DNA of 64,000 nucleotides, taken from positions 13,826,001 to 13,890,000 of the forward strand of contig NC_045713.1 of the NCBI RefSeq assembly GCF_009834535.1, written 5' to 3'. Numbering within the stretch: position 1 is the first letter of the stretch; each line of letters opens with the position of its first letter. Below, piece after piece: positions 4,876 to 63,130 of the stretch. The notes below the pieces were generated by a model. The model was not told where the DNA came from, ran no database searches, and worked only from the letters and a program-made list of their open reading frames with translations. The stretch comes from Camelus ferus. Lineage: Eukaryota. The translations under genes and the position numbers were made by a program.

Positions 4876-7800
4876 TCACTCCAGCATGGCGTCCAGCTGG
4901 TCGGCCAGGTCGTCAAACATGCTACCAATGTCATCCAGGATGCTGCCGGTGCTCTTCTCTGCTGCCGAGGGGCTGGGGGCGGGCGCGGCGTGAGTAGACG
5001 GGGTCGATGCAGAATGTCCCGCCCCAAGTCCCGTTCTTCCTCTCGTTGAGGCCACGCCCTCGCTTCGGGGCGGGGCCAGAGTAGTTCACGCCCCCACACC
5101 ATCCACCCCGCCCCCGAATCCAGCCCACGCACTGCAGCCTGGTGCGAGGACTGGGGCAGCTCGCAGACCCCGCCCAACCAGGGCCCCGACCCGCGATGTA
5201 TGGGCGGGGCCTGCTCCAGACCATGCCCCTTCAGTGCGACTCGGCTCCGCCCTCGCAGGGCACCCTTGAAGCGCTCTCAGGCAGCATTCTCATGTAGGCC
5301 CTACCTACGCCCACGCAGGACCCCGTCCCGCACCTACCGTGAGCCCTGCGCGTCCTCCTGTCGGATCTTCTCTTCTACGGCCTGCAGCGCCGCTGCCAGG
5401 CACGCGCTCGTTTCCTCCAGCTTCTGCCGGACGCTGTCCCCAGGCGAGGCACCGTCGGGCGCAGCTGGAGGCCCGGTGGCGGCGGAGGCGGCAGCGGCGC
5501 GCGGCGGCTTGGCGGGCACGTGCAGCGCGGGTGCACCTGGGGACGGGGGCCTGGCGGGGCTGGCGCTCAGTGAGGGCGGCGTGCTGGCCGGCTTGGCGAG
5601 GGCGGCGGGCGGCTGGCGTGCCGGCGAGGGCGCCGGCGACGGACTGGTGCTGCCCGACTGCAGCCCCGCCGCGGCCTTGGCCGGCTTGGGCGCAGTGGGC
5701 GGCGGCGGCGGCTTGGGAGACACAGGCGGCGGCGTGCCATGAGCACGCTTCACCTCTGCGGGGAGGAGGAGACTCGCACCGGGTGGGAGGTAACGAGGAG
5801 CGCGCGCTGCCCACCCCAGCAGAGGCCCTGCCGCAGCGCTAAGGTAACACCCTCTGCACTGCTAAGGCCTCATCCCTCCGCAACCCTCAAGCCCTGGGCC
5901 TCCCTGAGGCTGCCAGGGGTCGGGCTTCCCAGTGCACACCTGCTTAGGTGACTGCCTCCAAACCCGGGCCAGCCCACCCCCACCTCCATCCCTCTCCAGG
6001 TGTGGCCTACTGCAGCCACTGACCCTTCAGTTGCTTGAATGCTACAGGGCCTTTGCACCTCTGATCCTTATGCCTGAAAGCCACTCCCCTCCCTCCTGTG
6101 CTGGGGTTACTCTCCAGCCAGGTCAGAATCCTCCCTGACCCTTCCAACCTCTTTCTTCCACAGGTGCTGCTATTCATGGCTCACTGAGCAATGTGTGGAT
6201 TCATCTACCCTTGTCCCAGCTCTGGGCTGGTGGAGCGGTCCAGTGGGTGGATGGATGGATGAGAGAGAACACTTTCCTACCCCACTTCACCTGGTCTTTA
6301 TCAAATCCAAGAAATGGAAAACCCCTCAGACCATGGAGTGGGGAGCTGGCAGCGGGGTGAGGGTTCCCTAGCAGGCTCCCTGCACCTACCTGGGCTGCCC
6401 GGACCTGGCAGCGGCACCTTCTTGGAGGCAGGTGTGGGTGAGCCCTGGATCTTGGGCACAGGCTGAGCCAGAACGGGCTTGGGAGAGACAGGCGGCTTGG
6501 TCAGCTTCCGGGTGTCGCTGTCGGGCGGGGGCAGCGGGGGCAGGTGCATCAGGTCAGAGGGCGGGGGCTCAGCGGGCGGAGGTGGAGGGGGCAGCTCTGG
6601 GGGCCCAGCCTGCTCAGAGGCCGGTCGGCGGCGCACAGTGCCCATTCCATTCTGGTACACAGACAGCGGTGGGGGTAGCTCAGGACCTGCCTCCCGCTCC
6701 TTGGCTTTGGGCCGGCGCTTGACAGTGTCGGACTCAGTTAGGATGAACTTCACGTTCTCCTGCTGGCTCTGCTTGGCTCGGATGCGCCTCTTGAGTGTGG
6801 CACTGGCCTCCACCCTGGCCAGGGGCGGTCCCTCTGCACTCGCCTCGCCCTTGGCTGGACCTCGAGGCCTCTGCCGGGCAGTGCCATCTTCCACAAACTG
6901 GCCGTGATCTGCAGGGGGCCCCTGCTCTCCTGGACTACGGCGAGCAGTGGCCAGAAGTCCTGTGACGGGCCCACTCAGCGTGCGGCGCCGGTTCACCACC
7001 TCACCATCAGGCCCAATGGCCTCCTTGTGTTTCACCGAGGCCAACACTGTGGCCACCCGCCCTGGCTCCGGGCTGGCAGGGCGAGGTGTGGGGTGGCCCT
7101 CGGGGGGCCTGCGGGCTGCCCGGCCCCCACCCCCAATGGACGACAGCTCGAGCATGGCTGCAATGCTCTTCACGCTGCCAGCACTTCCTGTGTCCACACT
7201 GCCAGCCAGATCACTAGCCCGGCGGCGCTGTGCTCGGACCCCCAGCCGGCCGTCCTCAGTCCCAGCCCCCTCGGTCTCCACATCTGGCACCGACTCATCG
7301 GCCAGGTTGGCACTGGCCATGGCTGAGCTGGAGCGCTTGGGCGGGGGCGGTGGGGGCCCCTTCTTTCTCGGTCGCACAGCGAATGACTGGCTGCGGTTAA
7401 CGTTCTTGTCGGCACCAGCAGGAGCCCGCACCGAGTGGCTGCGTCCCACACGCCGCTGGACCGTGGCATAGGGCCCTGCAGCCGCCGGCACCAGCAGCTC
7501 GTCCCGCTCCGGCTCACTGTCAGACGCTGCGTAGCGATTCAGGCTGTGGGCACGCTTCTTGGGCCGCTCTGGCTCCACATCAGCCTCGGGGGGCAGGCAC
7601 AGCATGGGCACAGTCGTGGGAACAGCCGCAGGTGCAGGCCCCGGAGCAGCCGGCGCTGCCTCGCTCTCCACGGGTTGGGGCAGCACATAGGCAAAGCCAC
7701 GGTGTGTGGGTGACTGAGGCAGCGAGCGAGGTGACATGGGTCGCTCTGCTGGTGGCAGCAGCTGGGGGGTGGGCTTCACCTTGGCTGTGGCTGGGGCTGG

Positions 7801-10800
7801 GCCATGAGGCCCCCCGACAGCCTGGGGGGAGCTTGGCCGGGCTTTTGTGGGTGTCTGCGGGGGCGTGAAGTGGCTGGCACCTGGTGGAAGGACCTGCCGT
7901 GGCTTGCCAGGCACTGGGGGCACGCTGGCCCGCTTGATGCTGTGGCCGTGGCGGCTGGGCCGCGCCTCCTTAGGGGGGGTCCCTGGGGCTGGCCCCTCAT
8001 CCAGCAGGTACTCCTGGCTTCGTGACATGGGGCTGCCAGGCCCAGGGGGTCCATCGCCCAGCAGCTCCTGAGAACTGCTCATGTGCCGAGCCCGCCCACC
8101 CAGGCTGGGCTCTGGCCGCATAGAGGCCCTTGGGGTGGGCGGCAGGTGGTTGGAGGGCTTCTCGGCAGTGGCAGCGGCAGTGGCAGCGGCAGTGGCAGCG
8201 GCAGCAGCCCCTTCGGCCGGGCCAGTCATGGCAGCCTGCAGCTCACCGCTGAGCTCACTGTCCTGGAAGGTGGTCATCTTAGGAGACTGGCAGTCAGCTG
8301 GGGCAGGCTCAGGTGGGGGTGGCGACTCTATGGCCATCACTTCAAGCGACTGTGGTACCTTCCGGCGCAGGGGTCCCCCCTCATACTTGGCATACTCTGC
8401 CTTCTGTAGCTCCGCCAGTTTCCTCACTGCCAGCATTAGCTTCTTCTGGTGTCCTGAGTAGGGCACAGGGAAGGTAAGGCCAGGGAGGGTGGCAAGGACC
8501 AGGAGGCAGCAGGGGCCGGGTGAGGCCTCACCCAACTTGGTGATGCCGATCTCCTGCAGATCCTCCCAGGTGATGTCGGTGATGAAGTCAATATTCTCAT
8601 AGCCGTTGTCCACCAGCACCTTGTAGTACTGGGCCAGGCCGATCATGGACAGCCACACAGCCAGGTTAGCCTACGGAGCAGGGGACACAGAGGGCAGCCC
8701 GAGCTGGCTGCCCACACCCTGCCCACCACTTGGAGCTGTCAGAGGAAGGGGCACCGGGCCAGCCCCGCACAGACAGACAGAAGGACAAACAGACAGGCCA
8801 GAGGTGTCAGCTTTGGAGACAGGGCCGCCTTGACAGGAGCCCAAGGCCAGCTCACACACGCGTGCCAACACATGCAAACACACACAGGGGTGACCCTTTC
8901 CTCAGGACACCCTTTGGGGGAGAGCAAAGAACGTGCTTCCTCACTTGCCCAGGCAGCCACAGGGACAGCACTCAAGAGGACACACCCCACACATCGTGGA
9001 CGCAGACACACAGCACCAACCAGATACGGGTATACACACGCCTTGCATCTCAGCCACACACGGGCACTGACACCCTGCTGAGTCACGCTCACCAGTTCCC
9101 CACCAGCGCAGGCACACCTCATATACCATGTCACACGCATGTGCAAGCGTCTGTGTTGGTCTTTACCCAGAACCAACTGGTGGCTCCCTGAATGGCATCC
9201 ACCTGTCCACACACTCCCAGCTCAATGTCACTCACACACCATCACGCAGCACACTTGATCACCCCCTGGGTGCAAGCACAGTGAGGCCCATGGGACCCAG
9301 ATGTGCTGGCTGGGAGGGGCCCTGAGCCGCTGACTGAGTGGGGTGAAGCAGGGTGGACAAACATGAACCTGCTTGTCACCAACCCACAGCATCTCCCTCA
9401 TGGATGTGTGGGAGCCTGAAGCACAGCATGAGGCCCAGAGAGGCAGCAAGGATGCGACAGGCCCTGGGCCCACCTTCTCCCAGTCCAGAACCTGTCCCAC
9501 CACAGGGGTGCCTGTCTGTGACAGCACGGCCCACTGCCTATGTGGCTGTCAGCCATCAGGGCAGCCAGCATGTGCAGTCATTGATTGGCGCCCAGAGTGT
9601 ACTTAGTGCACGTGTGTTGCCTGTGTACACGAAGCACACACGCACACATCTCCCCCATGTGTGTGCCTGGGTGTGTGCGAGCATGCCCTGTCAACACAGC
9701 CCCTCTGCAGTGTCTGGGTGAGTGTGCAATGGGCAGCAGTACAGGAGTGCCCGGTGGCGCCGGTGTCCTCGTGTGGCAGCCTGAGTGTTGAGCACGTAGT
9801 AGAGATGGGGACTCTCCAGGCTTCCAGCTCCTTTTGCCCTGACGGCCCTCAGAGGCTGTCCCCTCTTGCCCCTGCCCCAGTGCCCCTGACGGAGGGACAG
9901 GGGCCATCCTCTGCTCTCCTCTCCCTGGATTCCCCAGAGGGCAGGGGAGGGCTGTAGCCAGGGAGGCAGTCTGTCTGTCTGCCCATCCTGGCCTGGCCAC
10001 CGGGGTGCAGGGGGCCTTACGGGTTTGTGCTCAGGCAGCCAGTCAGGGATGCTTAGGCCACTGATCTCTGCAGTAATCTTCTTCCGGTGGCCCGGCTTGG
10101 TGACCCCAATGGCCGTGAGGTCCTAAGTAGAGGAGAGGCCTGTTAGTTGGAGGCTGGAGGCCCATCTCTGGGTGGCCAGGCTTCAGGTAGCTCACCTCAG
10201 GGGTCATGCGGCTGATGGTGGGCAGGTCGTAGCCAGCACTGATGAAGTTGGGGGCGTAGAGCTGTAGCTGGAACGTGGCAAGCCACTGGCTGACAGCCTC
10301 GGTGCTCTGGAAGACACAAGGCACCCGCTGCAGGCTCGCCCGCCCGCTCACCTGCCAGGCATGCATCCCAGCCACCGCAGTGCCTCGTTCTCTGCTCAGC
10401 CGAAGACCGTGCAGTTCAATCTGCCGTCCACTGGGCCATCTGCAGCCAGGGCCCGGTCAGCCTGGCACCGCTGCTCCTCCTCACGCTGTGGTCTTGGATG
10501 CTGCCGTCTTGAGCATCGTCCAGCACTTCAGCCTCCTTCTATGATCTCCACCGGGAGGGTCCAGCTGCTGTCCACATCATAGGCTTCCCTGACAGTCCCC
10601 CCCATTCCTGTCCCAGGGACACCCTGGAGTGTGGTCCCATGGGAGGGGCACTAGGAATGGGGCCTCAGGTAGGGGCACCTAGTGCTGCCCCTCCCCACCC
10701 TAGTAGGTGGGCTCTGCCCAGAGTTCTGCAGAGGACTCAGCCAGCAGCTCGCCTCCCCTAGCACACAGGTGCAGCACACCGGACCTATCTCACCCATGCA

Positions 10801-19800: not shown

Positions 19801-20819
19801 TCTGCCACCCATCAGAGCCCTGCTCGCACCCTCACAGGTGCCCTGACACACTGACACAGCCATACGTGCGCAGCCGCACACGCGGCTGGTCCACACGCCC
19901 ATCCATCCATCTCCTGTGTCCCCGGGGGAGGCTCCAGGCTGAGCTGGGATGAGTGCTGGGATCAGGGCTCCAAGCTTCCAACCATCCCCCCGGGCCCTCA
20001 GAGCGCAAGCTCAGGATGGCTCCTGGGAGACCCCCTCCTGCCCCCCAGCCCCCCAGCCCCCATTCCCAGCAAGGAAGCCAGAGAGGACCAGGGTCTCTAC
20101 TGCAGGGTCTGCACCTGCCTCAAGCTCAGCCAGCTCTGGGCGACCTTGGGCCTCTGTTCCCCCATCCGTAAATGGCCCCCAGCCGGCCATGCCTGGGCAG
20201 CCACACCCCCAGCATGGTCCTGCCTCCCACTCCCCTGCCAAGCCTGTTATTAAACACGGTGCGGTGACGGGGTCTGACAGAGACTGTCAGCTCAGTAGTC
20301 GCCCCTCACTGCAAAGGGCCCCTCCCTCTCTCCGTGGTGTCGGGGAAGAGGGGGAATCCGCCTCGCCCTTTAAAGGCCCAGCAGAGACCTCCAGCTGTCA
20401 GTCCGCAGCCCAGGAAAGGAGGGGGACGGAGGCAGGGAGAGAGGGATGCGAACGCCTGCGGTCAGGGAGGTGGGTGCCGCCAGTTACCCGCTGGGGGCTC
20501 GAGTGACGGCAGGGCGCTTAGTGCTGCCCCTCCTTCAGGGCTGGCAACGGTGGGGTGCGGACCGAGGGTCTGGGCGCTGCTGGCCCCGCCCCGCCCCCGG
20601 GGACCCGACAACATCCCCCTCCCTGCCCTGCGCTGGGCGGGGTAGGGGGTTCAACGCTGGAGACAGCCCCCGGGCGCGCCGCAGCTCCCGCCCGTCCCCC
20701 GCGCGCCCCGCGACCCCGCACTCACTGGCCTTCCCGGGCCGCGGCCTCTGCAGCAGCCTCTGCGCGGTCCCCACGTCCTCCGCCTTCACCGCCTGCACCA
20801 GCTCCTGTTCCTTCCCCAT
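4876..20819 (-). CDS. CASKIN1: Caskin-1 (ankyrin repeats, SH3, CASK-interaction motif EEIWVLRK, two SAM domains, long Pro-rich tail); 20 coding exons, 1448 aa
   Basis: Exons in transcript order: 20726-20819, 14931-14982, 14726-14823, 14398-14543, 14220-14315, 13963-14093, 13369-13477, 13177-13285, 12992-13086, 12706-12823, 11615-11716, 11439-11527, 11278-11362, 11101-11192, 10196-10306, 10021-10122, 8532-8670, 6390-8453, 5338-5755, 4876-4972. Total 4347 nt, open; [20 protein letters not shown]...[12 protein letters not shown]. Confidence 0.97.
8164..8204. repeat. Coding 12-bp tandem repeat (GGCAGTGGCAGC x3 plus partial) in CASKIN1 exon 18, encoding (AATA)n
   Basis: Three perfect units at 8164-8199 read directly from the sequence. 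Confidence 0.95.
12200..12530 (+). mobile_element. Degraded L2 LINE 3' fragment in CASKIN1 intron 10
   Basis: Pyrimidine-rich L2-like motifs (cagccacaccagcctcc, agggccttctctgaccgccct, aagggcaagctcctggagagcagg). Boundaries approximate. Confidence 0.55.
13685..13770 (-). mobile_element. MIR fragment
   Basis: cccactttaaggatggggaaactgaggctcagagaag matches the reverse MIR core. Confidence 0.65.
16360..17105 (+). mobile_element. L2 LINE 3' portion in CASKIN1 intron 1
   Basis: L2-like segments ending in the typical tail (gtgctcagtgaactggtgactgaattga). Boundaries approximate. Confidence 0.65.
17770..17870 (+). mobile_element. tRNA-derived SINE (camelid-type), with A tail and 11-bp TSD
   Basis: A-box/B-box-like head (agctcattggtagag...gggtacaatcccc), poly(A), and TSD aaaagagctgg at 17759-17769 and 17871-17881. 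Confidence 0.85.
19240..19400 (-). mobile_element. MIR
   Basis: cccatcctacagatgaggagactgaagcccagaga...gcccaaggtc matches the reverse MIR core. Confidence 0.65.
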
Positions 20820-40574: not shown

Positions 40575-41040
40575 CAACCTTTAAAAGAATAAAAGGAACT
40601 TGTACATAACAGCACTATTCACAACAGTAGAAAGGGTGGAAACAACTCAAATGTGCTAGATGAATAAATAAATCGATCTATCCATATAATGGAGTATTAC
40701 TTAGCCATAAAAATGAATGAAGTTCTGCTGCATGCTACAACCTGGATGAACCTCAAAAACATTATTTCAAGTGAAGGCAACCAGATGCAAAAGACCACAG
40801 GTGTAATTCCATTTATATGAAATGCCCAGAAAAGACAAGTCTATAGAGAAAAAAAATGGTTGCCNNNNNNNNNNNNNNNNNNNNNNNNNNNNNNNNNNNN
40901 NNNNNNNNNNNNNNNNNNNNNNNNNNNNNNNNNNNNNNNNNNNNNNNNNNNNNNNNNNNNNNNNNNNNNNNNNNNNNNNNNNNNNNNNNNNNNNNNNNNA
41001 TTTCATGTGCTTATCACAATTCGAAAACTACAAAAGAATA
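40575..41040 (+). mobile_element. Old L1 3' end spanning an assembly gap
   Basis: L1M motifs before the gap (ggagtattacttagccataaaaatgaatgaag, gtaattccatttatatgaaatgccc) and an A-rich tail after it. Confidence 0.75.
40865..40999. other. Assembly gap (135 N)
   Basis: Run of N. Confidence 1.
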
Positions 41041-51721: not shown

Positions 51722-52927
51722 ACGTAGAAACCCGCCGCTTGTGATGTTGCGGCAGTGGCAGCCTCGGGGGCTGGTGCCACTGCCCTGGCAGGTTCCCCTC
51801 TGGCAGCCACTGCATGCCCAGGCCACTCTATACTCTAGTGTCTGGTCACCCCACCCAGGGCTGCCCACGGGGCTGGCGGCACCTTGGTGGTGCGTAGGTG
51901 TTATTGGCATGTGGACAGGCAGCCTCCTGCCACTGCCCTGCCCAGCTGGAGCTGTGACCCCAACCTCCTTGAGTCCTGCCGAGGTAGGGGGAAGGGGGTG
52001 CTGCTTCCCAGCCTCCAACCCTGGGGCTGCGCTGGGGCTGAGGAATGAGGCTGGACAACCAGGAGCCTTGGCTTTTTACCCTGAGGGGACGGGTAGGAGA
52101 TATGGGGCAGGAGGAATGGGGCTGGTCTTTCCTGCCTGTGCTGCCTTGTTTCCCTGAGGGGGTGCAGCTTGAGGAGGGAGATTCTGGGTGACCTAGTTTC
52201 TCCAGGGCGGGGATGAGAGCAAGGCCTGGACCATGGGCATGGCTGGTTGGTCCTCTTCCCCAGTCCTGATGCAGCTTGTGGGCAGACAGGGCCTTCTGAG
52301 TCTGTTCTGACAGGCGTGGGGGCAGCAGAGCAGTCTCAGGGTGGATGTCCTGCTGCCTTGTCCTGGGGTGAGGGTAGAGGTGGGGGGGTCTCCTGGGAAT
52401 GGGAGCTGGGACTTACAGTGTCCAAATTAGTGGAGGGGGCGGGACCCAGCACAGTCTGGCCCCTCCCTGGACCAGGGCTTCAAATTACCACCAAGTTGGG
52501 GTGCCAGCGCTGCTGCTGGACCGAGCCCTTGAAGTCTGTTCACTCTCAGCCTGGACCTCAGATCTTCACTGGGACCCAGATCCTGAGCCTCTGACAGGCC
52601 TATCCACATCCCTCAGGTGAGTCTGGGGGTGGGGCTGAGCTGGGTTGGGGGGCTAGATGGGAATGGGGTCTTAATATTTGGGCCTCAGTTTTCCCATGGA
52701 GTAGGATGGTCATGGGCGGAGAGCCAAGCCTACCACCCTGGGGAGACTGGAGAGCAGCATGGGAAAGATGTGCCCTCGTGCCAGCCAGCAATGGGTGGCA
52801 GAACCTGTCCAGTCCCCCGTTCCCCTGAGCCCCTGCAGCCGGGTCAGAGAGGAGTGGGCCGATGTGTCCAACTCTAAATCTGCGCTCAAGCGGGCTGTGT
52901 CTGTCCTAAGCTGGCCCGCTCTGTACC

Positions 52928-54637
52928 ATGGACAGCGGGCCCCTGGCCTTACTGACAGCGCTCTGGGCGCTGGGGGCCTCTGGAGTCGCGGCGCTGCGCA
53001 TCGGAGCTTTCAATATCCAGAGCTTTGGCGACAGCAAAGTGTCAGACCCAGCCTGCGGCAGCGTCATCGCACAAGTGAGGCCGGGGACCCTGGGCGGGGT
53101 CGCAGCTGGGCTCTGGGGCGAATCTTCCTTTAGTGACCCCGCACCTGCCGGCCCCTCCCCTAGATCCTGGCTGGCTATGACGTTATGCTCGTGCAGGAGG
53201 TGCGAGACCCCGACCTGAGCGCCGTGTACGCGCTCATGGAGCAGATCAACAGGTGTGGTGGGTAGGGCCCTGCGTTGGGAGCCGGGGCCAGGATCCCAGG
53301 TCTCGGCGCGATGCCCTGACTCCGGGTCTGGACGGTATCTCTGCAGCGTGTCCAAACATGAGTACAACTTCGTGAGCAGCGAGCCTTTGGGTCGGGACCA
53401 GTACAAGGAAATGTACCTGTTCGTCTACAGGTGAGGGGCGGGGCCGCGGGGGCGGGGCGCGCGGGGCACCGGGGGCCGCTCAGCGACCTCACCCACCCTC
53501 TACCCCCAGGAAGGACGCGGTGTCGGTCGTGGAGACGTACCAGTACCCGGACCCTGAGGATGCCTTCAGTCGTGAACCTTTCGTGGTCAAGTTCTCAGCA
53601 CCTGGCTCTGGTGAGGCCCCGCCCCATGCTGGCCCCGCCCCTCCTGCGGGCCCCGCCCCAACCCCTGATGCCCACATACTCCCGCAGCTGCCAAGAAGTT
53701 GGTGCTGATTCCGCTGCATGCCGCACCGCACCAGGCCGTGGCCGAGATTGACGCGCTCTACGACGTGTACCTGGACGTGATCGACAAGTGGGGCACCGAC
53801 GTAAGCCCCCGCGTCCGCATGGCCCCGCCCTCCCTCCAGGGTCCCGGGTTCCCGAAGGCGCGCGCTGGCGATTGGCCCGCCCCTCCAGCAGGCTCAGGCC
53901 CTGCTCTGTGGTCCCCCGCAGGACATGCTGTTTCTGGGCGATTTTAACGCTGACTGCAAATACGTGCGGGCTCAGGACTGGGCGGTCATCCGCCTGCGCA
54001 GCAGCGAAGTCTTCAAGTGGCTCATCCCCGACAGCGCCGACACCACGGTGGGCAACTCAGACTGTGCCTACGATCGCATCGTGCTCTGTGGCGCCCGCCT
54101 GCGCAGTAGCCTGAAGCCCATGTCGGCCGCTGTCCACGACTTTCAGGAAGAACTTGGCCTGGACCAGGCTCAGGTGAGTGCTGGCTGGGTCCGGCAGGGG
54201 TGAGGGGAGCACAGGGTCCTGGGGTCCCAAGGCCGCGGCTGGGCCCAACCTCAGTGCACCCTGCGCACCCCTCCCTGCACTAGCGTTTCTAGAAAAGACC
54301 TTCAGTGGTTCAGTTCTGGCTGAATGGAACAAATCTGGGATGGCGCTATAGGAAGCTCCTTGTCTCTCCAAAGTAGGGTCCCCAGTTGTACTCCCAACCC
54401 ACCTACAGGTAATAGCTAGGGTGGACAGTCCAGTCCTCACCAGCTTGCTCCCCCACCCCCATGCAGTGGTTTGTGGATACCCACTGGGCTCCATCCCGAG
54501 TTGGGGCAGTTTTCTAGGGTGGAGCGTGAGAGGGGACAGGCTGCTCAGCACAGCCTCTGAGGCTTGGCCCCTCCTCCCTCCAGGCCCTTGCTATCAGTGA
54601 CCATTTTCCTGTGGAGGTGACCTTCAAGTCCCACTGA
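52928..54637 (+). CDS. DNASE1L2: Deoxyribonuclease-1-like 2, 279 aa (short form)
   Basis: Exons 52928-53074, 53164-53252, 53347-53430, 53510-53610, 53688-53800, 53922-54173, 54584-54637 total 840 nt. Signal peptide then LRIGAFNIQSFG; catalytic motifs PLHAAP, GDFNAD, YDRIV and SDHFPVEV intact. A non-coding upstream exon probably ends at 52616. Confidence 0.96.
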
Positions 54638-55500: not shown

Positions 55501-56958
55501 TGTACTGAGGGCAGCAGGGGATAAGTGCTCACACACACTCACACACATGTAGGGTTGATGTACAAAGCCAACCTCCAGGCCCTGCTGTTCCCCCTACAGC
55601 CCCAATTCCCAGGCCTGCAGGACCCTTCAGGCGCTTGTTTATGTCAGGGTCCTGCCACACCCAGCGCTGCAGTCCTTGGGGAGGTCAGGAAGGCTGGCCC
55701 CTGCCCTCAGCTGGTCAGCAGCCCAGGGACATTTGGAGAGCCCCCTTAGTGGTGAGCAGGTGGATTGGGTTAAGGTCCTGCCCATAGAACCCAAACAGCG
55801 CACAGTGGTTCAGCCCCTTCAAAGGTGCCTCCCTGGTAGGTTCCTCCTCAGGAGCCCTGGGCAAGGCAAGGACTTATCAGGGAGAACAGTGGCCTCTTTC
55901 TCAGGTAAGCCCAACACCTGAGGATTGGGAATAAGCAGAGCTGGGGTACACAGTGTAACTGACAGGAGCCCCATGAGGTTTCTGGTTTTCAAAGCATCTC
56001 GACTTTGGCAGGATTTGAGAGCTGATCTGAATTGTACGGGAGAGGAAAACTTTTGTTTCAAGAGTTTGGACAAGCTTCTCTTGCTAGCTCTTTCTAAAAT
56101 AAGATTTAGGATGCTTGTAATGTAAAATGCTTCACAAGGAATGTCTCCCTCACCTCAGTTCCTCTGAAATTTGTACATGCCTTCCATCCAAACACACCAA
56201 ACATGGCTGCCCAAGGGCTTTTCCCTGTGTCAGGGGTGTGGGTGGGGGTCATGTGTGGCTTGTTAGGGCCCACGACTGCCTGGCCTTATGCCTCTAGCAA
56301 TCAGGCATCCCACCAGCCAAGGACTTTATTCTGCTTTGGCAAAGGAGACAGTCAGGGGTGACATTGTTGAAGTCGAGAATGGCCCCACTTGTCAGGTTAT
56401 GATTCCCAGATCAAGACACTGCTTGCCAGTTGTGCCCCTCTGCCCACCTGCCAGGCACAAAAGGCACTCATGGGTGGTGGCGTGTTTTGGGACTATGGCT
56501 AAGAGGCACTGGGCCTTCTAGGAAGATCAGCAAAACAAAGAGCTGAAAGTACTTTTAAATGGAAAACACCTTATTTAAAATCCCTTGGAACCACAGGAGA
56601 GGGCATACGGCTAAGAGCCCTGCGTGGGCAGCCCAGCCCTTAGCCTTTTATTCACTTGAGTTTTTCTAAGTAGGTCTTTAGGGACTTCTGGATGGAGTCC
56701 CTGGAGATGACGCTGACGATGTACTGGATGTCAGTGTCACGCTGCTTCAGCAGGTGGTCTGCAGTGGGCTTTTGCATCATGTTCTTGGTCAGCTGTCGAG
56801 TGTGATCTAAGGAAAATGGGGTCCCCGGGTAAAGACCCACAATCTGGGACAGTGGCATCATTCCCAGCCCTGCCAAGAGAATTCCTGTTGGAACTCTGGT
56901 AGAAAGCTTAGAAAATACAGAGTAAGGAAGAAGAAAATGAAAATCATCTGTTTCCTAC

Positions 56959-57590
56959 TGAGACACATGGCATAACCATTAAAAGAACGACACAGCAATT
57001 AGCACCAAGATGGAGGAAGAGTCAACTCCCAGTAGACCTTGAGCATCATTATATGCTTAGTGTAATATATTAACATGCTAAATGATACTTCCATAGGCGC
57101 CATGAAAATTTCAAGGTTTATCATAAAAGGTCAAAAAGTGGGTTATGGCCCAATTCTTGGGAATCCCAGCTCCTTCTCCAAAGTAGTTGGAATAACCCTC
57201 CCACTTATTAACATATGAAGTTACTGAGCCCATTAAAAACTTACAACCCTGCACCTCGTGGCCTTTCTTTTGCCTTTTGAGAAGGCCCCCATTCTGTCTG
57301 TGGAATGTGTATCTCTTGCCTTCAGAGACAGCATGCCCTCTGTCTATGGAGTGTGTATCTACTTATACTTTAAACTAAACTCCACCCCCCACCTCATGGA
57401 TTTTCTGGCTTTCTGACATGGCCTGCACTTGGTCTATGGAGTATGCATCTCTCTGAATAAACCTACTTTTACTCAACTATGGCTCACTCTTTAATTCCTT
57501 CCTTCACAAAGCCAAGCACTTGAGGGGAGTCCATCCCAGGGACTTGCCTGGAACATGTCCATCCTCCCCCTCCCCATTTTTCCTGTATCA
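56959..57590 (+). mobile_element. ERV1-class solo LTR in ECI1 intron 6, antisense to ECI1
   Basis: TG...CA ends; 4-bp TSD CTAC at 56955-56958 and 57591-57594; AATAAA at 57456-57461 followed by a U5-like sequence. Confidence 0.85.
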
Positions 57591-57759
57591 CTACAATCCA
57601 TGGGTTTGTTTTAAAAACATACAGGATGATACTGTAAAAACTGCCTTCTTAACCTATTATTTTCACTCATCTGTATTGTTGAGAATATTTTCCATGTTGC
57701 TAAATATTCTTTTACAACATAATTAATGGCTGCACGGTATTCAATCACTTGTGTAAGGC

Positions 57760-58035
57760 ATTGGCAAACATGGCCCCCTGTGGCTCAAGAAGGAAGAATG
57801 GTCTTTACATTTTCATATAGATGAAAAAAATCTTAGGGTGACATTTTGTGACATGTGACAATTACATGAAATTCAGAATTTAGTGGCCTGGCTTTATTGG
57901 AATACCGACACATTTGTTAGTTCCCGTACACTGAGGCTTCCCTCACGCTCCAGCGCCACAGCTGTGGTGGAGACGGTGTGACCCATAGAGCTGCAAATCT
58001 CCCTGGCTCTTTATAAACAGTCTTCTCACCCCTGG
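57760..58035 (+). mobile_element. MER58-like DNA transposon remnant
   Basis: cattggcaaacatggcccc...ttttgtgacatgtgacaattacatgaaattcag...ggagacggtgtgacccatagagctgcaaat...ctcacccctg. Confidence 0.55.
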
Positions 58036-58105
58036 TCTCCATGATGGTTGATACAAGCAGCCCTATTTCTAGACACAGACACCCAGGCTGTTCCCAATTG
58101 TCTGT

Positions 58106-58600
58106 TTGTAGACTGAATAGTGGACCCCAAAATGGTATGTCCAAGTGGCCTTATTAGGAAAAGGGTCTTTGCAATGGGTCTAGGGCCAGTGATAGGTGTC
58201 CTTAAAAGGAGAGGAAGATTTGAGACATAGAGACACTCAGAGGGCATGTGAAACGTGAAGACGGAGACAGGGTTTGGAGCAATACAGCCACAAGCCAAGG
58301 AAAGCCAGGAGGCCCCAGAAGCTGGAAGAGGCAGGGAGAAGCCTCCCCTGGAGCCTCTGCAGTGAGCAAGGCCCTGCCTGCACTCTGACTTTAGCCTTCT
58401 GGCCTAGAGACTGTGAGAGAATGCATTTCTGTAGTTTGTTTTTTAAGGTGTGGGAGGGAGGTAATTAGGTTGATTTATTTACTTTTTTGTTTTTTAAGAG
58501 GAGGTACTGGGGAATTGAACCCAGGACCTCGTAGGGCATGCACTCTACCACTTTGAGCTATTCCCTTCCCCCTGCATTTCTGTAGTTTTAAGCACCCCCA
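58106..58600 (+). mobile_element. MLT1-type MaLR LTR interrupted by a SINE
   Basis: tgtagactgaat...ccacaagccaaggaaagcc...agaagctggaagaggcaggg...gactgtgagagaatgcatttctgtagttt. Confidence 0.8.
58438..58572 (-). mobile_element. tRNA-derived SINE (camelid-type) with 16-bp TSD
   Basis: TSD tgcatttctgtagttt at 58422-58437 and 58573-58588; same head and tail as the 17770 and 23065 copies. Confidence 0.88.
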
Positions 58601-60796
58601 TCCTAACTCTCTGTCTTGTGATAATCTGTTATCTTGGCCTCAGAACTCTACAGTCTGCTACTGTGAAAGGCTCATTTGTGAATTACCTGAGAACTTTCTG
58701 TCTCAGCAGGAGCTTCCAGCTGGGAACGGGAGGGGCTCTGCTTGACCCACAGCTGTCGGCCCTCCCTGGGCTCCTCACCTGGAATGGCCATCCACTGGGC
58801 CATCACCGAGAGCACTGTGCTCAGCACTTGGTCCTCAGGTACACCTGGTCCACCATGCCCATGTGGAGGGCCTCTGCCAGTGGGAGGAGCAACCCCAGCT
58901 GCAGGGCACACTCGGTGGCACGGTGCCTGATGGTGTTTATGAGGGTGTCTTTTAACCTGGAACGGAGACACCTACTTACCACAGGCTCGGGGTTCCCTGA
59001 GAAGTGGGCACAGCCCCAGGGACAAGTGGAATGTGGGTGCAGCCCCCGGCCATACCAGAAGGGGATGATGATGCCCAGCAGGGTCGCATTCAGCCCCATG
59101 AGGTACTTGGGGTTGTCAGCCAGCACCCGGTAATTGCAGGTGAGAGATAGAGGCAGCCTCCGGCTGGGCAGGCTCCCTCAGGGGAAGCAAGATCAACGGG
59201 TCCAGGTGCTGCTGCGGCTGGTCCCAGTCATGTTCCAGAAAGCCTAGGGCCCGAGGAATGCCCTTCAAGTGCATGTGAGCTCTTGGGATGCCTCCAGACC
59301 CTAGGGTTCTGCACCCTAGTCTTTGGTGGGGTGTGCACACAATGGGGACCCAGGCTTGCCCATCAGCCTGAGGGCTGAGGGCACCGGCAGGGTGGCCAGC
59401 TATCACGGCGGAACATCCCTCTTTTCTTAGCCTCACATCTGGGCAGCAAGCGGCCTTTCCACTCAAAACTCTTGTCTGTACCCTCAAATGCCAAGCAGGC
59501 ATTTAGCCAGAGCTGTTACCTCCTGTCGTGCCCCACTGAGGGCCTGCTGCCATCTCCAGCAGGAGGTCTTCAGAAGCCCAACCTCACTCTGCCCTGTCTC
59601 ATGCACACTGCTGCCCCAAAGAGAAGTGGCAGGTTGCTGTCAGCTGCCACTGCACCTCAGGGAGTCTTCCTGCCTCTGGCCATCCCTCCTCTCCACCCAG
59701 AGCAGGCCCTCCTCGCACCTCTGTGAGCCTGAGCCCTGCCCCTGCGTTGCCCAGGTTAGGCCAAAGTCACGTTCCCAAAATGTGGATCTGATCCCCCACA
59801 CGCCCCTCCCCCCCAGATCCCTCTTGCTGGGCCCTGTCGACCATGGGCCCTGGTCCCTCTGCACCTCCCACCCCCCAGTAACCTGGTCTGTAATGACCTG
59901 TCCACCTCTGAGAGTCTCCCCGATTGCCCCTTTCCTCTCCAGAGGCTTCTTGAAGACAGGGTCATGCCCATCCCTCAGCCTAAGGAGCGAGTCATCCAGG
60001 CCCCTCGGGAAGGAGACACTCACATTGATGGCGGCAATCAGCACCAAGTTAGACAGGTAGAGTCGCAGCCACATCTCCTGCATAGCCTTCCAAAACTCCG
60101 CGTAGTGGGCTGGGTTCTTTCCACACAACTCCGTCAGGTCCAGGCCAGCTGAGAAGACCCCAGGGCAGTCCTAGGGAAGTAAGGGCGCCCCAGGAAGCTG
60201 CTGCCAAGTTTGCATAGGGTCCATCTTTCCTGAAGCAGTGTGGGCTCAAGGTTATCCCTGCAAAAGTGTCACCTGACCTCACCTAAGTTCTGGCCCCGGG
60301 TATGGAATCTGAACCTTGCCCCAGGGCCTGACCCCACAACCCCATGGGCCTGGGAAGCAGCCTGGGACAGAGTCACCAGTCTCCTGCTGGAGAACCATCT
60401 GCCCAGGTCCCCCTGGAGCCACAAGGCGACCCCTGGAGGCCTCTTGTGGTGGCACCTGTGTCTGGAGCTGCCCAAGTATTCAACACCACACGAAGTGTGT
60501 AGGATGGTTTCTGAGTCGGGACTTGGATCAGAGGACTCGGGCCCCGCGGGAGCTCCAGAGCACCCACCGAAGTCAGGAGGATGCCTTGGAAGGTCTTGTC
60601 ATGCTCCAGTTTCTCCAGACTGATGACTAACTCTGTCAGCAGCTCGAGGCTGAGGCTGTTCACTGGGGGGCTCTTGAGCTTCAGTACAGTGACCCCTGGT
60701 TTGAAAATGAAGAGGACAAAGCTCATGCCTAGCACTGGAAAGGTGCTCCCAGTCATCCTGCATCCTCAGCCTGGCCATGGGAAGCTACACAGTTTG

Positions 60797-61280
60797 GGTT
60801 TTTTTAAAAGGGAGGTGAGATTCACCTAGCAAATTAGCGATTTAAAAATGAACAGTTCAGGTCCACTAAGTACATTCACAATGTTGCACAACCACCCCTA
60901 TCTACTTGTAGAACATGTCCATCAGCACAAAGGAAACCCCGTACCCATCAACAGTTGCCCTTCCTCCTGCCCCAGCCCCTGGCCATCACTAGTCTCCTTT
61001 CTGTTCCTATGGATTTGTCTGTTGTGGACACTTCACATACATGGACTCACCTATGGGAACTTTTGTGTTTGCCTTCTTTCACTTCACATGTTTTCAAGTT
61101 TCATCCTTGCAGCAGCATGAGTCAGTGCTTCCTTCCTTCTTAAGGTCAAAGGACATTCCACTGTACGCGTGGAGCACATTCTGTTTATCCATTCGTGTGC
61201 TCATGGACACTTGGGTTGGTTCCACCTTTTGGCTATTGTGAATAATGCTGCTGTGAACATTCAGGTACAAATTTCTGTTG
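60797..61280 (-). mobile_element. Old L1 (L1MB-like) 3' end in ECI1 intron 2
   Basis: Reverse L1 3'UTR motifs (aagtacattcacaatgttgcacaaccac, ggacacttgggttggttccaccttttggctattgtgaataatgctgctgtgaacatt). Confidence 0.85.
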
Positions 61281-62479
61281 ATCTTTTTCTCTCAAATGCA
61301 AGTCCTATATCCTCATGGGAATAGGAAATGGCCTTAGTTTTCTTGAGGAGGACGTGAACAAATTCTTAGAACCAGATGTGCAGGGGAGCTCTAGTGGGGC
61401 GCTCTGGTTCAGGCCTGTTTAAGAAAGGACTGAGGGTAAAGGGGTCAGATGTTTTTCACATTCTCCACCGTCCAAACATCCATTTTGCCAGCAGCAGGGA
61501 AAACAGGAGCGACAGGGCCTGCCCTTGTGGACAGTGCAGCTGCTAGCCTGGGCTGGCCAGGGCCATCTGTTCTCACTGCCTGGCCTAAGGACCGACCTCA
61601 AGTGATTCAGAGACGCCACTGTTCATTTAGGGTGCACTTCCCTGGTCGGGGTCTTGCAAATCTCTGGATGGTCAACACAACCCATTCTCTAGGAATGAGA
61701 ATTAAGTCCTGCAGGCAAAATGGCTCTTCTGAGACTTTTGATTTATGAAGAAGAGGTAGTTATTAACTGGCTACAGGTATGTACATATAAGCAATCAAAA
61801 CTTTCAGAAGTGAGCTCCCCAAACTTGGTTCTGAGGGGTTTCTGAAGCTGACTCGATTTTTGCAGAGCTTGGTGAGGCTGACTCCAGGACACTGGGTGTA
61901 AGGTAAAGAGGCTGAAGGTGAACAGAAGTTAATCAAGAATTTGGATGGACTTGTACATCACGAGGTAGACAACTGCATCCCTGGCTCAGGGTAGGTACAA
62001 AATAAGTGTTTCTCGAATGGAATGTTGAACGTCATCTTACATCAGCTGCAGTAACAGGACTTTAGCCCTAAATGAAAACATTTTTAAAAAGCACTTTTAG
62101 TCCATTAATTCATCCAAGCCTCAAGATGCCTGAAGGCAACCTGGGTCTGGCAGTGAGGACACAACCAGGCAGATTTGGCTTTCTGAGCTCAAACTTAACC
62201 TCCCACCACGGTAAGCCAGCAAAGCTAGTGAATTCTTCCCTGGTGGGGGGGAAAGCACTTTGGTAAATTATCTAGCCGGTAATTTTTTTTTCTTGCTTAC
62301 ATAACAAAGTTTACTCTTTCAACCGTTTTGAAGTGTACAACTCAGTGGTATTTAGTCATAACGTCGTGCAACCATCATCACCATCCAACACTTTTAAAAT
62401 CTGTTTTTGCATTTTTTCATGTCTATCGAAATCTATCATAGAAATGATCCTTTCAGAAACTCAGGTTTTCATGGGACTC

Positions 62480-63130
62480 GTCGATGGGACCAACGTGGGC
62501 CCCTCATCACCTGCCTTCGGCGGCCATGAGAGAAGCTAAACAGGAGAACTGAATCAGGTGCCCTGATATCGGTCCAGGCAGGAAACCGGCTCCGGCGCTC
62601 GGCGAGCCCGACGTGCAGAAGGCCGGGGTTCCGGGTCGCTTACCTGCAGACGGGTCCGGCTCCACCAGCACCCGCTGGCTCGCGAAGCGCCGCGCGCCGT
62701 CCCCGCCACCGGCCACCGGCTGAGTCCCTCAGAGTGCCGCACCTCGGAGCAGAGGCCCTGAGAAGGGCCGCGCAAAGCTCGTTAGCCCGCCGCCCCTGCC
62801 CGGTCCCAGCCCCCGGCCCAGATCCCGCCTCCGGGCCACGCACACGGGCAGAGGAGGATGCGCGTCAGGACGCCGCATTGCTACCGCCAGGGCCATCTTG
62901 ACTGGTCCGGCCCGGTCGCGGCGCCGGGGTGTGGCCTCGCCGCTGGGGGAGGGCGGGGCTGGAGTCAGCGCCTGAGTCCGCCCACCGGTCCACCTGGATG
63001 CAAATCGTCCCCGCCCCCAGGAGGCCAAAGTGCCCGGCTTCACTGAGCAGGGCCCTGGGGATGCAGATGAATGGTTGCCAGGCAGGGATCCCGGGCAGAA
63101 CAGACGCCGTGTTCTCCCTCATCCAGCGGC
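62480..63130 (-). promoter_or_regulatory. CpG island over the ECI1 pseudogene promoter and exons 1-2
   Basis: Dense CpG and GC boxes; CAAGATGGCC (YY1-like) overlaps the ancestral ATG at 62896. Confidence 0.75.

What the first reader, a model, noticed from the sequence alone, without database searches (positions are those of the whole stretch)
56640..62896. ECI1 is inactivated at its syntenic locus: candidate lineage-specific loss of a core unsaturated fatty acid beta-oxidation enzyme
Seen: all seven ECI1 exons are present in order next to DNASE1L2, but the frame is broken five times (+1 in exon 1, TGA in exon 2, -1 in exon 5, -1 in exon 6, early TGA in exon 7), and the catalytic Glu is also replaced. 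The other seven genes in the same window splice into clean ORFs, which argues against general assembly error. Established: ECI1 converts 3-cis/3-trans-enoyl-CoA to 2-trans-enoyl-CoA in mitochondrial oxidation of oleic/linoleic-type fatty acids, and ECI2 can partly compensate in Eci1-null mice. Inference: this is a unitary pseudogene, probably in a camelid. Foregut biohydrogenation of dietary unsaturated fat or ECI2 redundancy could have relaxed selection. I am not aware of this loss being described, but I cannot check.
Basis: partly seen in the sequence, partly recalled or inferred. Interest (0 to 1): 0.92.

Follow-up and report, generated by a model that had tools for sequence, protein, structure and literature searches.

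The report
Camelids lost the ECI1 gene
The camel copy of ECI1, an enzyme that helps mitochondria burn unsaturated fat, is a dead gene at its normal chromosomal place, and the same breaks are in alpaca, so the whole camel family appears to have lived without it for some 20 million years or more.

Summary
On the minus strand of 56640-62896 lie all seven ECI1 exons, between DNASE1L2 and (beyond the window) RNPS1. All 12 splice sites are intact. The reading frame carries a +1 in exon 1, a TGA at codon 27 (exon 2), a -1 in exon 5, a -1 in exon 6 and an early TGA in exon 7. The catalytic Glu (Glu136 of PDB 1SG4) is Ala.

The window is identical to the Camelus ferus assembly GCA_009834535.1. Four other assemblies (C. 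bactrianus, two C. dromedarius, alpaca) share the exon-2 TGA, both -1 deletions and loss of the catalytic Glu, so this is not assembly error. The inactivation predates the camel/llama split. The exon-1 indel varies between camels, and the exon-7 TGA is found only in Camelus.

Codon models give omega 0.16 in other mammals, 0.23 on the camelid stem and about 1 (1.65, not different from 1) within camelids. ECI1 exons diverge between alpaca and camel as fast as the introns do, unlike the neighbouring DNASE1L2.

I found no intact camelid ECI1 protein and no published report of the loss. ECI2 compensation is inferred. The foregut-biohydrogenation idea is weakened because the ruminant sampled (goat) keeps an intact ECI1.

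The parts
62844..62896 (-). ECI1 exon 1 (53 nt; ATG at 62896-62894). It carries one extra G at 62874/62873 compared with the 52-nt exon of all intact orthologues.
   Evidence: The indel sits in a GC repeat and varies between camels: +1 here and in L012 (C. ferus), +4 in C. bactrianus, 0 in dromedary and alpaca.
62644..62757 (-). ECI1 exon 2 (114 nt). It has an in-frame TGA at 62731-62729 (codon 27, ancestral Gly), inside the mitochondrial presequence.
   Evidence: The TGA is shared by alpaca and all Camelus assemblies.
60568..60695 (-). ECI1 exon 3 (128 nt). It has no lesion of its own. In this assembly's shifted frame, the first stop of the canonical transcript falls here (TGA 60601-60599).
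   Evidence: Pfam ECH_1 E=4.9e-9.
60024..60170 (-). ECI1 exon 4 (147 nt), intact frame.
   Evidence: Pfam ECH_1 E=1.5e-11; 1sg4 residues 57-105, E=8e-23.
59056..59176 (-). ECI1 exon 5 (121 nt instead of 122). There is a 1-nt deletion between 59150 and 59149 (codon 157). The catalytic Glu codon is replaced by GCG (Ala) at 59087-59085.
   Evidence: The deletion is shared with alpaca. The Glu codon is GCG in Camelus and GTG in alpaca.
58779..58956 (-). ECI1 exon 6 (178 nt instead of 179). There is a 1-nt deletion between 58843 and 58842 (codon 226).
   Evidence: Shared with alpaca and all Camelus.
56640..56806 (-). ECI1 exon 7 (167 nt). An early TGA at 56654-56652 (codon 299) precedes the ancestral TAA at 56642-56640.
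   Evidence: The TGA is found only in Camelus; alpaca has CAA.
52399..54637 (+). DNASE1L2, the tail-to-tail neighbour. It is the synteny anchor and the control gene for constraint.
   Evidence: Between alpaca and the window its exons diverge 1.24% and its introns 3.54%.

Best explanation
This is the orthologous ECI1 gene (mitochondrial delta3,delta2-enoyl-CoA isomerase) of a wild Bactrian camel. It has decayed into a unitary, unprocessed pseudogene.

Shown:
- The gene was inactivated in the common ancestor of Old World camels and New World camelids. A nonsense codon at position 27, two 1-nt deletions (codons 157 and 226) and loss of the catalytic base Glu are present in Camelus and in alpaca.
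- Since then the locus has drifted neutrally and picked up lineage-specific damage. In Camelus this is an early stop in exon 7 and a variable GC-repeat indel in exon 1. In alpaca it is a 7-nt duplication in exon 2 and a GT>AT donor of intron 3.

Inferred:
- Any transcript would meet a premature stop in exon 2 or 3, far upstream of the last exon junction. It should be degraded or give a short peptide with no crotonase core, so no isomerase can be made from this locus.
- From the rates, the gene stayed under normal purifying selection for most of the camelid stem lineage and died shortly before the camel/llama split. My estimate is 0-27% of the stem branch, with a point estimate of about 9%. With a split of about 17-25 Mya and a stem of about 40 My (background knowledge), that is a few million years before the split.
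- The 3-enoyl-CoA to 2-enoyl-CoA step needed for oleate and linoleate oxidation is now carried by ECI2 in mitochondria and peroxisomes, helped by the peroxisomal multifunctional enzyme. This is what happens in Eci1-null mice.
For: Identity:
- Pfam ECH_1 hits and residue-level alignments to 1sg4 and 1xx4.
- Orthologous position between RNPS1 and DNASE1L2, as in hippo, goat and dolphin.
- Intron-exon structure retained.
- Only one ECI1-like locus in the window, with HSPs in three frames.

Lesions:
-.
- Glu136 is the catalytic base of human mitochondrial ECI (PMC9541288). It aligns to Ala in the window.

Reality of the lesions:
- The same lesions occur in C. dromedarius GCA_000803125.3 and GCA_036321535.1, C. 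bactrianus GCA_048773025.1 and V. pacos GCA_048564905.1.

Relaxed constraint:
- Omega is 0.161 for the background, 0.233 for the stem and 1.65 for the crown. Crown omega equal to 1 is not rejected (p=0.33). Crown omega exceeds the background (p=5e-7). Stem omega equal to 1 is rejected (p=6e-8)..
- ECI1 exons diverge 2.98% and introns 2.19% between alpaca and camel. DNASE1L2 exons diverge 1.24% and introns 3.54%.

Absence of an intact copy:
- In a search with camel exon 4, the only camelid ECI1-like protein is a 171-aa dromedary model that skips the broken exons.
- Gene callers give inconsistent products of 171, 309, 327, 361 and 297 aa from near-identical DNA.

Compensation:
- Eci1/Eci2 redundancy and the mild mouse phenotype with raised C12:1 are summarised in PMC6700156 and PMC10573383.
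- ECI2 is listed among positively selected parallel-substitution genes in desert ungulates, including Bactrian camel (PMC12905343).
Against: - No whole-genome search for an intact ECI1 duplicate or retrocopy in camelids was possible. An unannotated copy would have escaped the protein searches.
- No transcript, protein or enzyme-activity data for camelids were examined.
- Lamini are represented by one alpaca assembly only.
- The codon model is my own implementation (GY94-type, F3x4), not PAML. It uses 10 sequences and about 300 codons.
- Genome annotations still call a protein-coding gene here. I could not retrieve those products. I could only show that the C. ferus and C. bactrianus lengths equal retained-intron models plus exactly 2 added nucleotides.
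- The state of ECI2 in camelids was not checked in sequence.
Confidence: 0.92

Rival explanations
1. The frame breaks are sequencing or assembly errors in one draft genome, and the gene is intact in the animal.
For: The exon-1 indel lies in a GC repeat and differs between assemblies: +1, +4 or 0. That single lesion could be an error or a polymorphism.
Against: The exon-2 TGA, both 1-nt deletions and the Glu replacement recur in five assemblies from four species, made with different technologies. Dromedary-specific substitutions are reproduced in two independent dromedary assemblies. Neighbouring DNASE1L2 exons carry no indels.
Confidence: 0.01
2. This locus is a dead copy, and a functional ECI1 duplicate or retrogene elsewhere in camelid genomes does the work.
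For: A whole-genome search could not be run. Unannotated copies would not appear in protein databases.
Against: The dead copy sits at the ancestral syntenic position with ancestral introns. RefSeq-annotated camelid proteomes are in the collection, since the DNASE1L2 XP_ entries were found. Yet no intact camelid ECI1 appears among the exon-4 word matches or the top 120 mammalian ECI1 hits. Only one locus is present in this 64-kb window.
Confidence: 0.04
3. The locus still makes a working protein through unusual splicing or recoding, as the genome annotations (297-361 aa products) imply.
For: All 12 splice sites are intact in Camelus. Annotators call a CDS across the locus in every camelid assembly.
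Against: - No combination of canonical exons and retained introns gives an open frame.
- The C. ferus and C. bactrianus product lengths equal retained-intron models plus exactly 2 nt, which is the signature of frameshift 'correction'.
- The product lengths disagree between near-identical genomes.
- The catalytic base is Ala or Val.
- Crown-camelid omega is about 1, and exons evolve like introns.
Confidence: 0.02
4. The loss was adaptive ('less is more') rather than a neutral consequence of redundancy, for example tuning oxidation of unsaturated fat during long fasts.
For: - Selection was normal on almost the whole stem branch, and several lesions then accumulated.
- ECI2 is reported under positive selection in desert ungulates.
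- Camelids are known for fat storage and fasting tolerance (background knowledge).
Against: Nothing in the sequence distinguishes adaptive from neutral loss. Eci1-null mice are only mildly affected, which fits simple redundancy. New World camelids, which are not desert specialists with humps, share the loss.
Confidence: 0.15

Closest known systems
Mitochondrial delta3,delta2-enoyl-CoA isomerase ECI1 (DCI); structures 1SG4 (human) and 1XX4 (rat); crotonase superfamily, Pfam PF00378
   Same: It has the same gene, the same seven-exon structure and the same chromosomal neighbours. The conceptual translation is 76-81% identical to intact mammalian ECI1.
   Different: The frame is broken in four or five places, the catalytic Glu136 is Ala, and the sequence evolves neutrally. 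It is a relic of the family, not a working member.
Eci1-knockout mouse (engineered null; van Weeghel et al. 2012, as cited in PMC6700156 and PMC10573383)
   Same: There is complete absence of ECI1 with ECI2 still present. It is the best available model of what a camelid lacks.
   Different: The camelid loss is natural, fixed in a whole family and old (at least the age of the camel/llama split). That leaves time for compensation, and the phenotype in camelids is unknown.
Other lineage-specific unitary pseudogenes of metabolic enzymes in mammals (for example GULO, UOX and HMGCS2, recalled from memory; the losses catalogued in PMC5865188 and PMC6386725)
   Same: It is the same kind of event: an orthologous, intron-containing gene with shared inactivating mutations and relaxed selection in one clade.
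   Different: ECI1 is not found in the three supplementary files of PMC5865188 held as text. No supplementary files of PMC6386725 are held, so that paper could not be checked. No paper found links ECI1 loss to camelids.

Membership tests
ECI1 / crotonase (ECH_1) family | Sequence similarity to the family across the crotonase fold | tested here: met
   Pfam PF00378 is hit by exons 3, 4 and 7, and weakly by exon 6. Alignments to 1sg4 and 1xx4 have E-values from 1e-8 to 1e-23.
ECI1 / crotonase (ECH_1) family | Catalytic base Glu (Glu136 of 1SG4) present | tested here: not met
   The codon is GCG (Ala) at 59087-59085 in all Camelus and GTG (Val) in alpaca. It is GAG in the six intact mammals.
ECI1 / crotonase (ECH_1) family | Uninterrupted reading frame encoding the full enzyme | tested here: not met
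   The lesions are +1, TGA, -1, -1 and TGA. The canonical transcript stops at codon 88 in this assembly and at codon 27 in dromedary and alpaca.
Unitary (unprocessed) pseudogene | Lies at the orthologous, syntenic position | tested here: met
   The order RNPS1-ECI1-DNASE1L2-E4F1 is found in camel, alpaca, hippo, goat and dolphin.
Unitary (unprocessed) pseudogene | Keeps the ancestral introns (not a retrocopy) | tested here: met
   Seven exons with GT/AG boundaries match the orthologues' exon lengths.
Unitary (unprocessed) pseudogene | Inactivating mutations are real and shared between independent genomes | tested here: met
   The TGA at codon 27 and the deletions at codons 157 and 226 are present in five assemblies of four species.
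Unitary (unprocessed) pseudogene | Relaxed selection after inactivation | tested here: met
   Crown omega is 1.65, not different from 1 and above the background at p=5e-7. Exon divergence is at least as high as intron divergence.
Unitary (unprocessed) pseudogene | No functional paralogue of the same gene elsewhere in the genome | tested here: inconclusive
   No intact camelid ECI1 protein was found in the collection, and there is no second copy in the window. No whole-genome nucleotide search was available.
Unitary (unprocessed) pseudogene | No functional transcript or protein | not testable with these tools
   No camelid RNA-seq or proteome data could be queried.

The most novel reading that the evidence does not exclude
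The whole family Camelidae is a natural, ancient ECI1 knockout. Its mitochondrial oxidation of oleate- and linoleate-type fats runs entirely through a re-tuned ECI2, which has been reported under positive selection in desert ungulates. The loss, or the compensation for it, contributes to the unusual lipid handling and fasting endurance of camelids.
Probability: 0.15. Interest if true: 0.8.

Novelty: new member of a known kind. Interest (0 to 1): 0.6.

Why it matters
ECI1 is conserved across the intact mammals sampled here. From background knowledge it is a core auxiliary enzyme of unsaturated fatty-acid beta-oxidation, and I know of no human deficiency, so knowledge of its dispensability rests on one mouse knockout.

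A mammalian family that has lacked it for roughly 20 million years or more is a natural experiment on enzyme redundancy between ECI1 and ECI2. These animals mobilise large stores of fat during long fasts; from background knowledge that fat is rich in oleate.

It also has practical consequences. Current camelid genome annotations carry 'repaired' or ad hoc ECI1 protein models of 171-361 aa. These should be re-labelled as pseudogene, and they would mislead orthologue sets, selection scans and metabolic reconstructions.

Tried and rejected

2. A 109-aa database protein (P0004) seemed to share the camel's exon-5 frameshift. Its contig (L001) turned out to be a pig transcript, 98% identical to pig ECI1, with its own indels. 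It is irrelevant.

3. The fin-whale 151-aa ECI1 model lacking exons 5-6 looked like a possible second loss. The locus is full of N gaps and the dolphin orthologue is intact, so it is an assembly artefact.

4. I tried to reconstruct the annotators' 361-aa and 297-aa coding sequences by exhaustive splice-path search. Both runs timed out. A cheaper test of canonical exons with intron retention found no open frame. It did match the C. bactrianus length, and my arithmetic matched the C. ferus length, only if exactly 2 nt are added. The alpaca 297-aa model remains unexplained.

5. The foregut-biohydrogenation explanation was considered and down-weighted, because the ruminant sampled (goat) keeps an intact ECI1.

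6. Ten full-text literature searches and two supplement look-ups found no report of the loss. Supplements of several screens are not held, so absence is not proof.
Full report
**What is at the coordinates.**
The minus strand of 56640-62896 carries pieces that hit Pfam ECH_1. [quoted passage not shown]

I extracted exact gene structures of intact orthologues from their genomic loci: hippo L003, dolphin L005, goat L006, leopard L008 and Myotis L007. All have seven coding exons of 52/114/128/147/122/179/167 nt; exon 2 is 126 nt in goat and 108 nt in Myotis.

The window has seven matching exons of 53/114/128/147/121/178/167 nt, with every acceptor AG and donor GT preserved. A tblastn of hippo ECI1 against the whole window finds only this locus, with its matches spread over three reading frames.

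**The lesions.**
Nucleotide and codon alignments show the following:
- An extra G at 62874/62873 in exon 1.
- TGA at 62731-62729 in exon 2. This is codon 27, a Gly codon in the intact artiodactyls and Myotis, and it lies in the mitochondrial presequence.
- A 1-nt deletion between 59150 and 59149 in exon 5 (codon 157).
- A 1-nt deletion between 58843 and 58842 in exon 6 (codon 226).
- TGA at 56654-56652 in exon 7, four codons before the ancestral TAA at 56642-56640.

The codon aligned to Glu136 of 1SG4 is GCG (Ala) at 59087-59085. Glu136 is the catalytic base of the human enzyme (PMC9541288). The canonical spliced transcript of this assembly would stop at codon 88. My own first model wrongly fused exon 1, the 86-nt intron 1 and exon 2.

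**Which genome, and is it an error?**
A search with camel exon 4 found a single camelid ECI1-like protein. It is a 171-aa dromedary model that skips exon 5 and half of exon 6. Its locus (L002, C. dromedarius GCA_000803125.3) is 99.37% identical to the window.

I reached four more loci through DNASE1L2 proteins of camelids:
- C. bactrianus GCA_048773025.1 (L010): 99.895% identical.
- C. dromedarius GCA_036321535.1 (L011): 99.4% identical.
- C. ferus GCA_009834535.1 (L012): 100.000% identical over 20,001 nt, so the window is from this assembly.
- Alpaca GCA_048564905.1 (L009): 96.6-97.2% identical.

I did not use any of these loci for the N run at 40865-40999, which lies outside them.

**Shared and private lesions.**
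- All Camelus assemblies and alpaca share the TGA at codon 27, the deletion at codon 157 and the deletion at codon 226, each at the same nucleotide.
- The catalytic Glu codon is GCG in Camelus and GTG in alpaca. The most parsimonious history is GAG>GCG in the common ancestor followed by a CpG transition in the alpaca line (inference).
- The exon-7 TGA is found only in Camelus; alpaca has CAA.
- The exon-1 indel sits in a GC repeat. It is +1 in C. ferus, +4 in C. bactrianus, and 0 in dromedary and alpaca.
- Alpaca alone has a 7-nt duplication in exon 2 and an AT in place of the GT donor of intron 3.
- Two dromedary-specific missense changes appear in both dromedary assemblies.

Assembly error is therefore excluded for the main lesions. 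The gene was already dead in the last common ancestor of Camelini and Lamini.

**Synteny.**
In dromedary, hippo, goat, dolphin, alpaca and Bactrian camel the order is RNPS1, ECI1, DNASE1L2 (tail to tail with ECI1), E4F1. The locus is the orthologue, and because it keeps its introns it is not a retrocopy.

**Selection.**
I built a 302-codon alignment of ten sequences, with frameshifted and stop codons masked. I fitted GY94-type branch models by maximum likelihood with my own code.

| Branch class | Omega | Tests |
|---|---|---|
| Background mammals | 0.161 | - |
| Camelid stem | 0.233 (profile 95% about 0.145-0.385) | equal to background not rejected, p=0.18; equal to 1 rejected, p=6e-8 |
| Crown camelids | 1.65 | equal to 1 not rejected, p=0.33; above background, p=5e-7 |

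Independently, ECI1 exons differ between alpaca and the window at 2.98% (27 of 907, plus two indels) against 2.19% for its introns. The neighbouring DNASE1L2 has 1.24% in exons against 3.54% in introns (p=5e-4) and no exon indels.

The gene was thus under ordinary purifying selection for most of the stem lineage and has been neutral since. With a stem of about 40 My and a camel/llama split of about 17-25 Mya (background knowledge), death came a few million years before the split. This is a rough inference.

**Is there an intact copy elsewhere?**
The protein collection holds RefSeq proteomes of the camelids, since their DNASE1L2 entries were found. No intact camelid ECI1 is among the top 120 mammalian hits or among proteins sharing words with camel exon 4. 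This makes a functional annotated paralogue unlikely.

**Annotation.**
Gene callers place a CDS on the locus in every assembly, but with products of inconsistent length:
- 171 and 309 aa in dromedary.
- 327 aa in C. ferus.
- 361 aa in C. bactrianus.
- 297 aa in alpaca.

No combination of canonical exons and retained introns is open. By my arithmetic from the exon and intron lengths, the C. ferus length equals exon 1 + intron 1 + exon 2 + exons 3-7 (982 nt) plus 2 nt. The C. bactrianus length equals the same with intron 5 also retained (1084 nt) plus 2 nt. This is what 'corrected' low-quality models would give (inference). It probably explains why the loss has gone unnoticed.

**Function and consequences.**
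ECI1 converts 3-enoyl-CoA to 2-trans-enoyl-CoA during oxidation of unsaturated fatty acids. ECI2 does the same in mitochondria and peroxisomes (PMC10573383). The mouse enoyl-CoA isomerase (Eci1/Eci2) line is listed with a mild phenotype, normal ketogenesis and raised C12:1 (PMC6700156 citing van Weeghel 2012).

The most likely state in camelids is therefore reliance on ECI2 (inference). A 2026 study lists ECI2 among positively selected parallel-substitution genes of desert ungulates including Bactrian camel (PMC12905343). That is suggestive only.

It is weakened because the one ruminant sampled, goat, which has the same biohydrogenation (background knowledge), keeps an intact ECI1, and the pooled non-camelid branches give omega 0.16.

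**Novelty.**
Full-text searches for ECI1 together with camel(ids), gene loss, pseudogene or inactivating mutations found nothing relevant. ECI1 is not in the three supplementary files of PMC5865188 that are held as text. It is absent from the main text of a 2025 all-camelid comparative study, which by design looked only for genes lost in Old World but present in New World camelids. The supplements of that study and of PMC6386725 are not held, so they could not be checked.

I therefore rate this as a new instance of a well-known kind of event. It is a solid and moderately surprising gene loss, not a new mechanism.

Noticed in passing
window 62873-62878 (exon 1); L010 20446-20501; L002 7829-7880: The exon-1 indel lies in a short GC repeat. 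It differs between closely related camels: +1 in C. ferus, +4 in C. bactrianus, 0 in dromedary and alpaca. It may be polymorphic within species.
   Followed up: partly
L012 14254-20498; L010 14254-20501; L011 14252-20915; L009 14504-20669; L002 10001-14081: Genome annotations call protein-coding models of 327, 361, 309, 297 and 171 aa on the dead ECI1 locus. The C. ferus and C. bactrianus lengths fit retained-intron models plus 2 added nucleotides. The alpaca 297-aa model (start inside intron 1) could not be reconstructed.
   Followed up: partly
window 52399-54637 (+): RefSeq labels DNASE1L2 of camelids 'LOW QUALITY PROTEIN' (374 aa in Camelus, 304 aa in alpaca), as it does in many other mammals. 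In the window the proline-rich segment (about 53600-53700) changes reading frame between two ORFs, which is probably the facultative short intron.
   Followed up: no
window 58480-58575 (intron 6 of ECI1): There is a short tRNA-like repeat (ggaggtactggggaattgaacccaggacc...), apparently a tRNA-derived SINE, next to a T-rich stretch.
   Followed up: no
window 40865-40999: This is the only N run in the window (135 N).
   Followed up: no
L013 (Balaenoptera physalus GCA_008795845.1), 7734-8778 and other N runs: The fin-whale 151-aa 'ECI1' model lacks exons 5-6 only because the locus is riddled with assembly gaps. The dolphin orthologue is intact.
   Followed up: yes
L001 (Logan ERR12131604, 1174 nt): This is a pig ECI1 transcript contig, 98% identical to pig ECI1, with two 1-nt deletions that split it into three ORFs. 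It is probably read or assembly error. One ORF mimicked the camel frameshift tail.
   Followed up: partly
L009 18441-18442 (alpaca, first two bases of intron 3) and 20524-20644 (exon 2): Alpaca has private damage: the intron-3 donor is AT instead of GT, and exon 2 has a 7-nt GGCCGGT duplication.
   Followed up: yes
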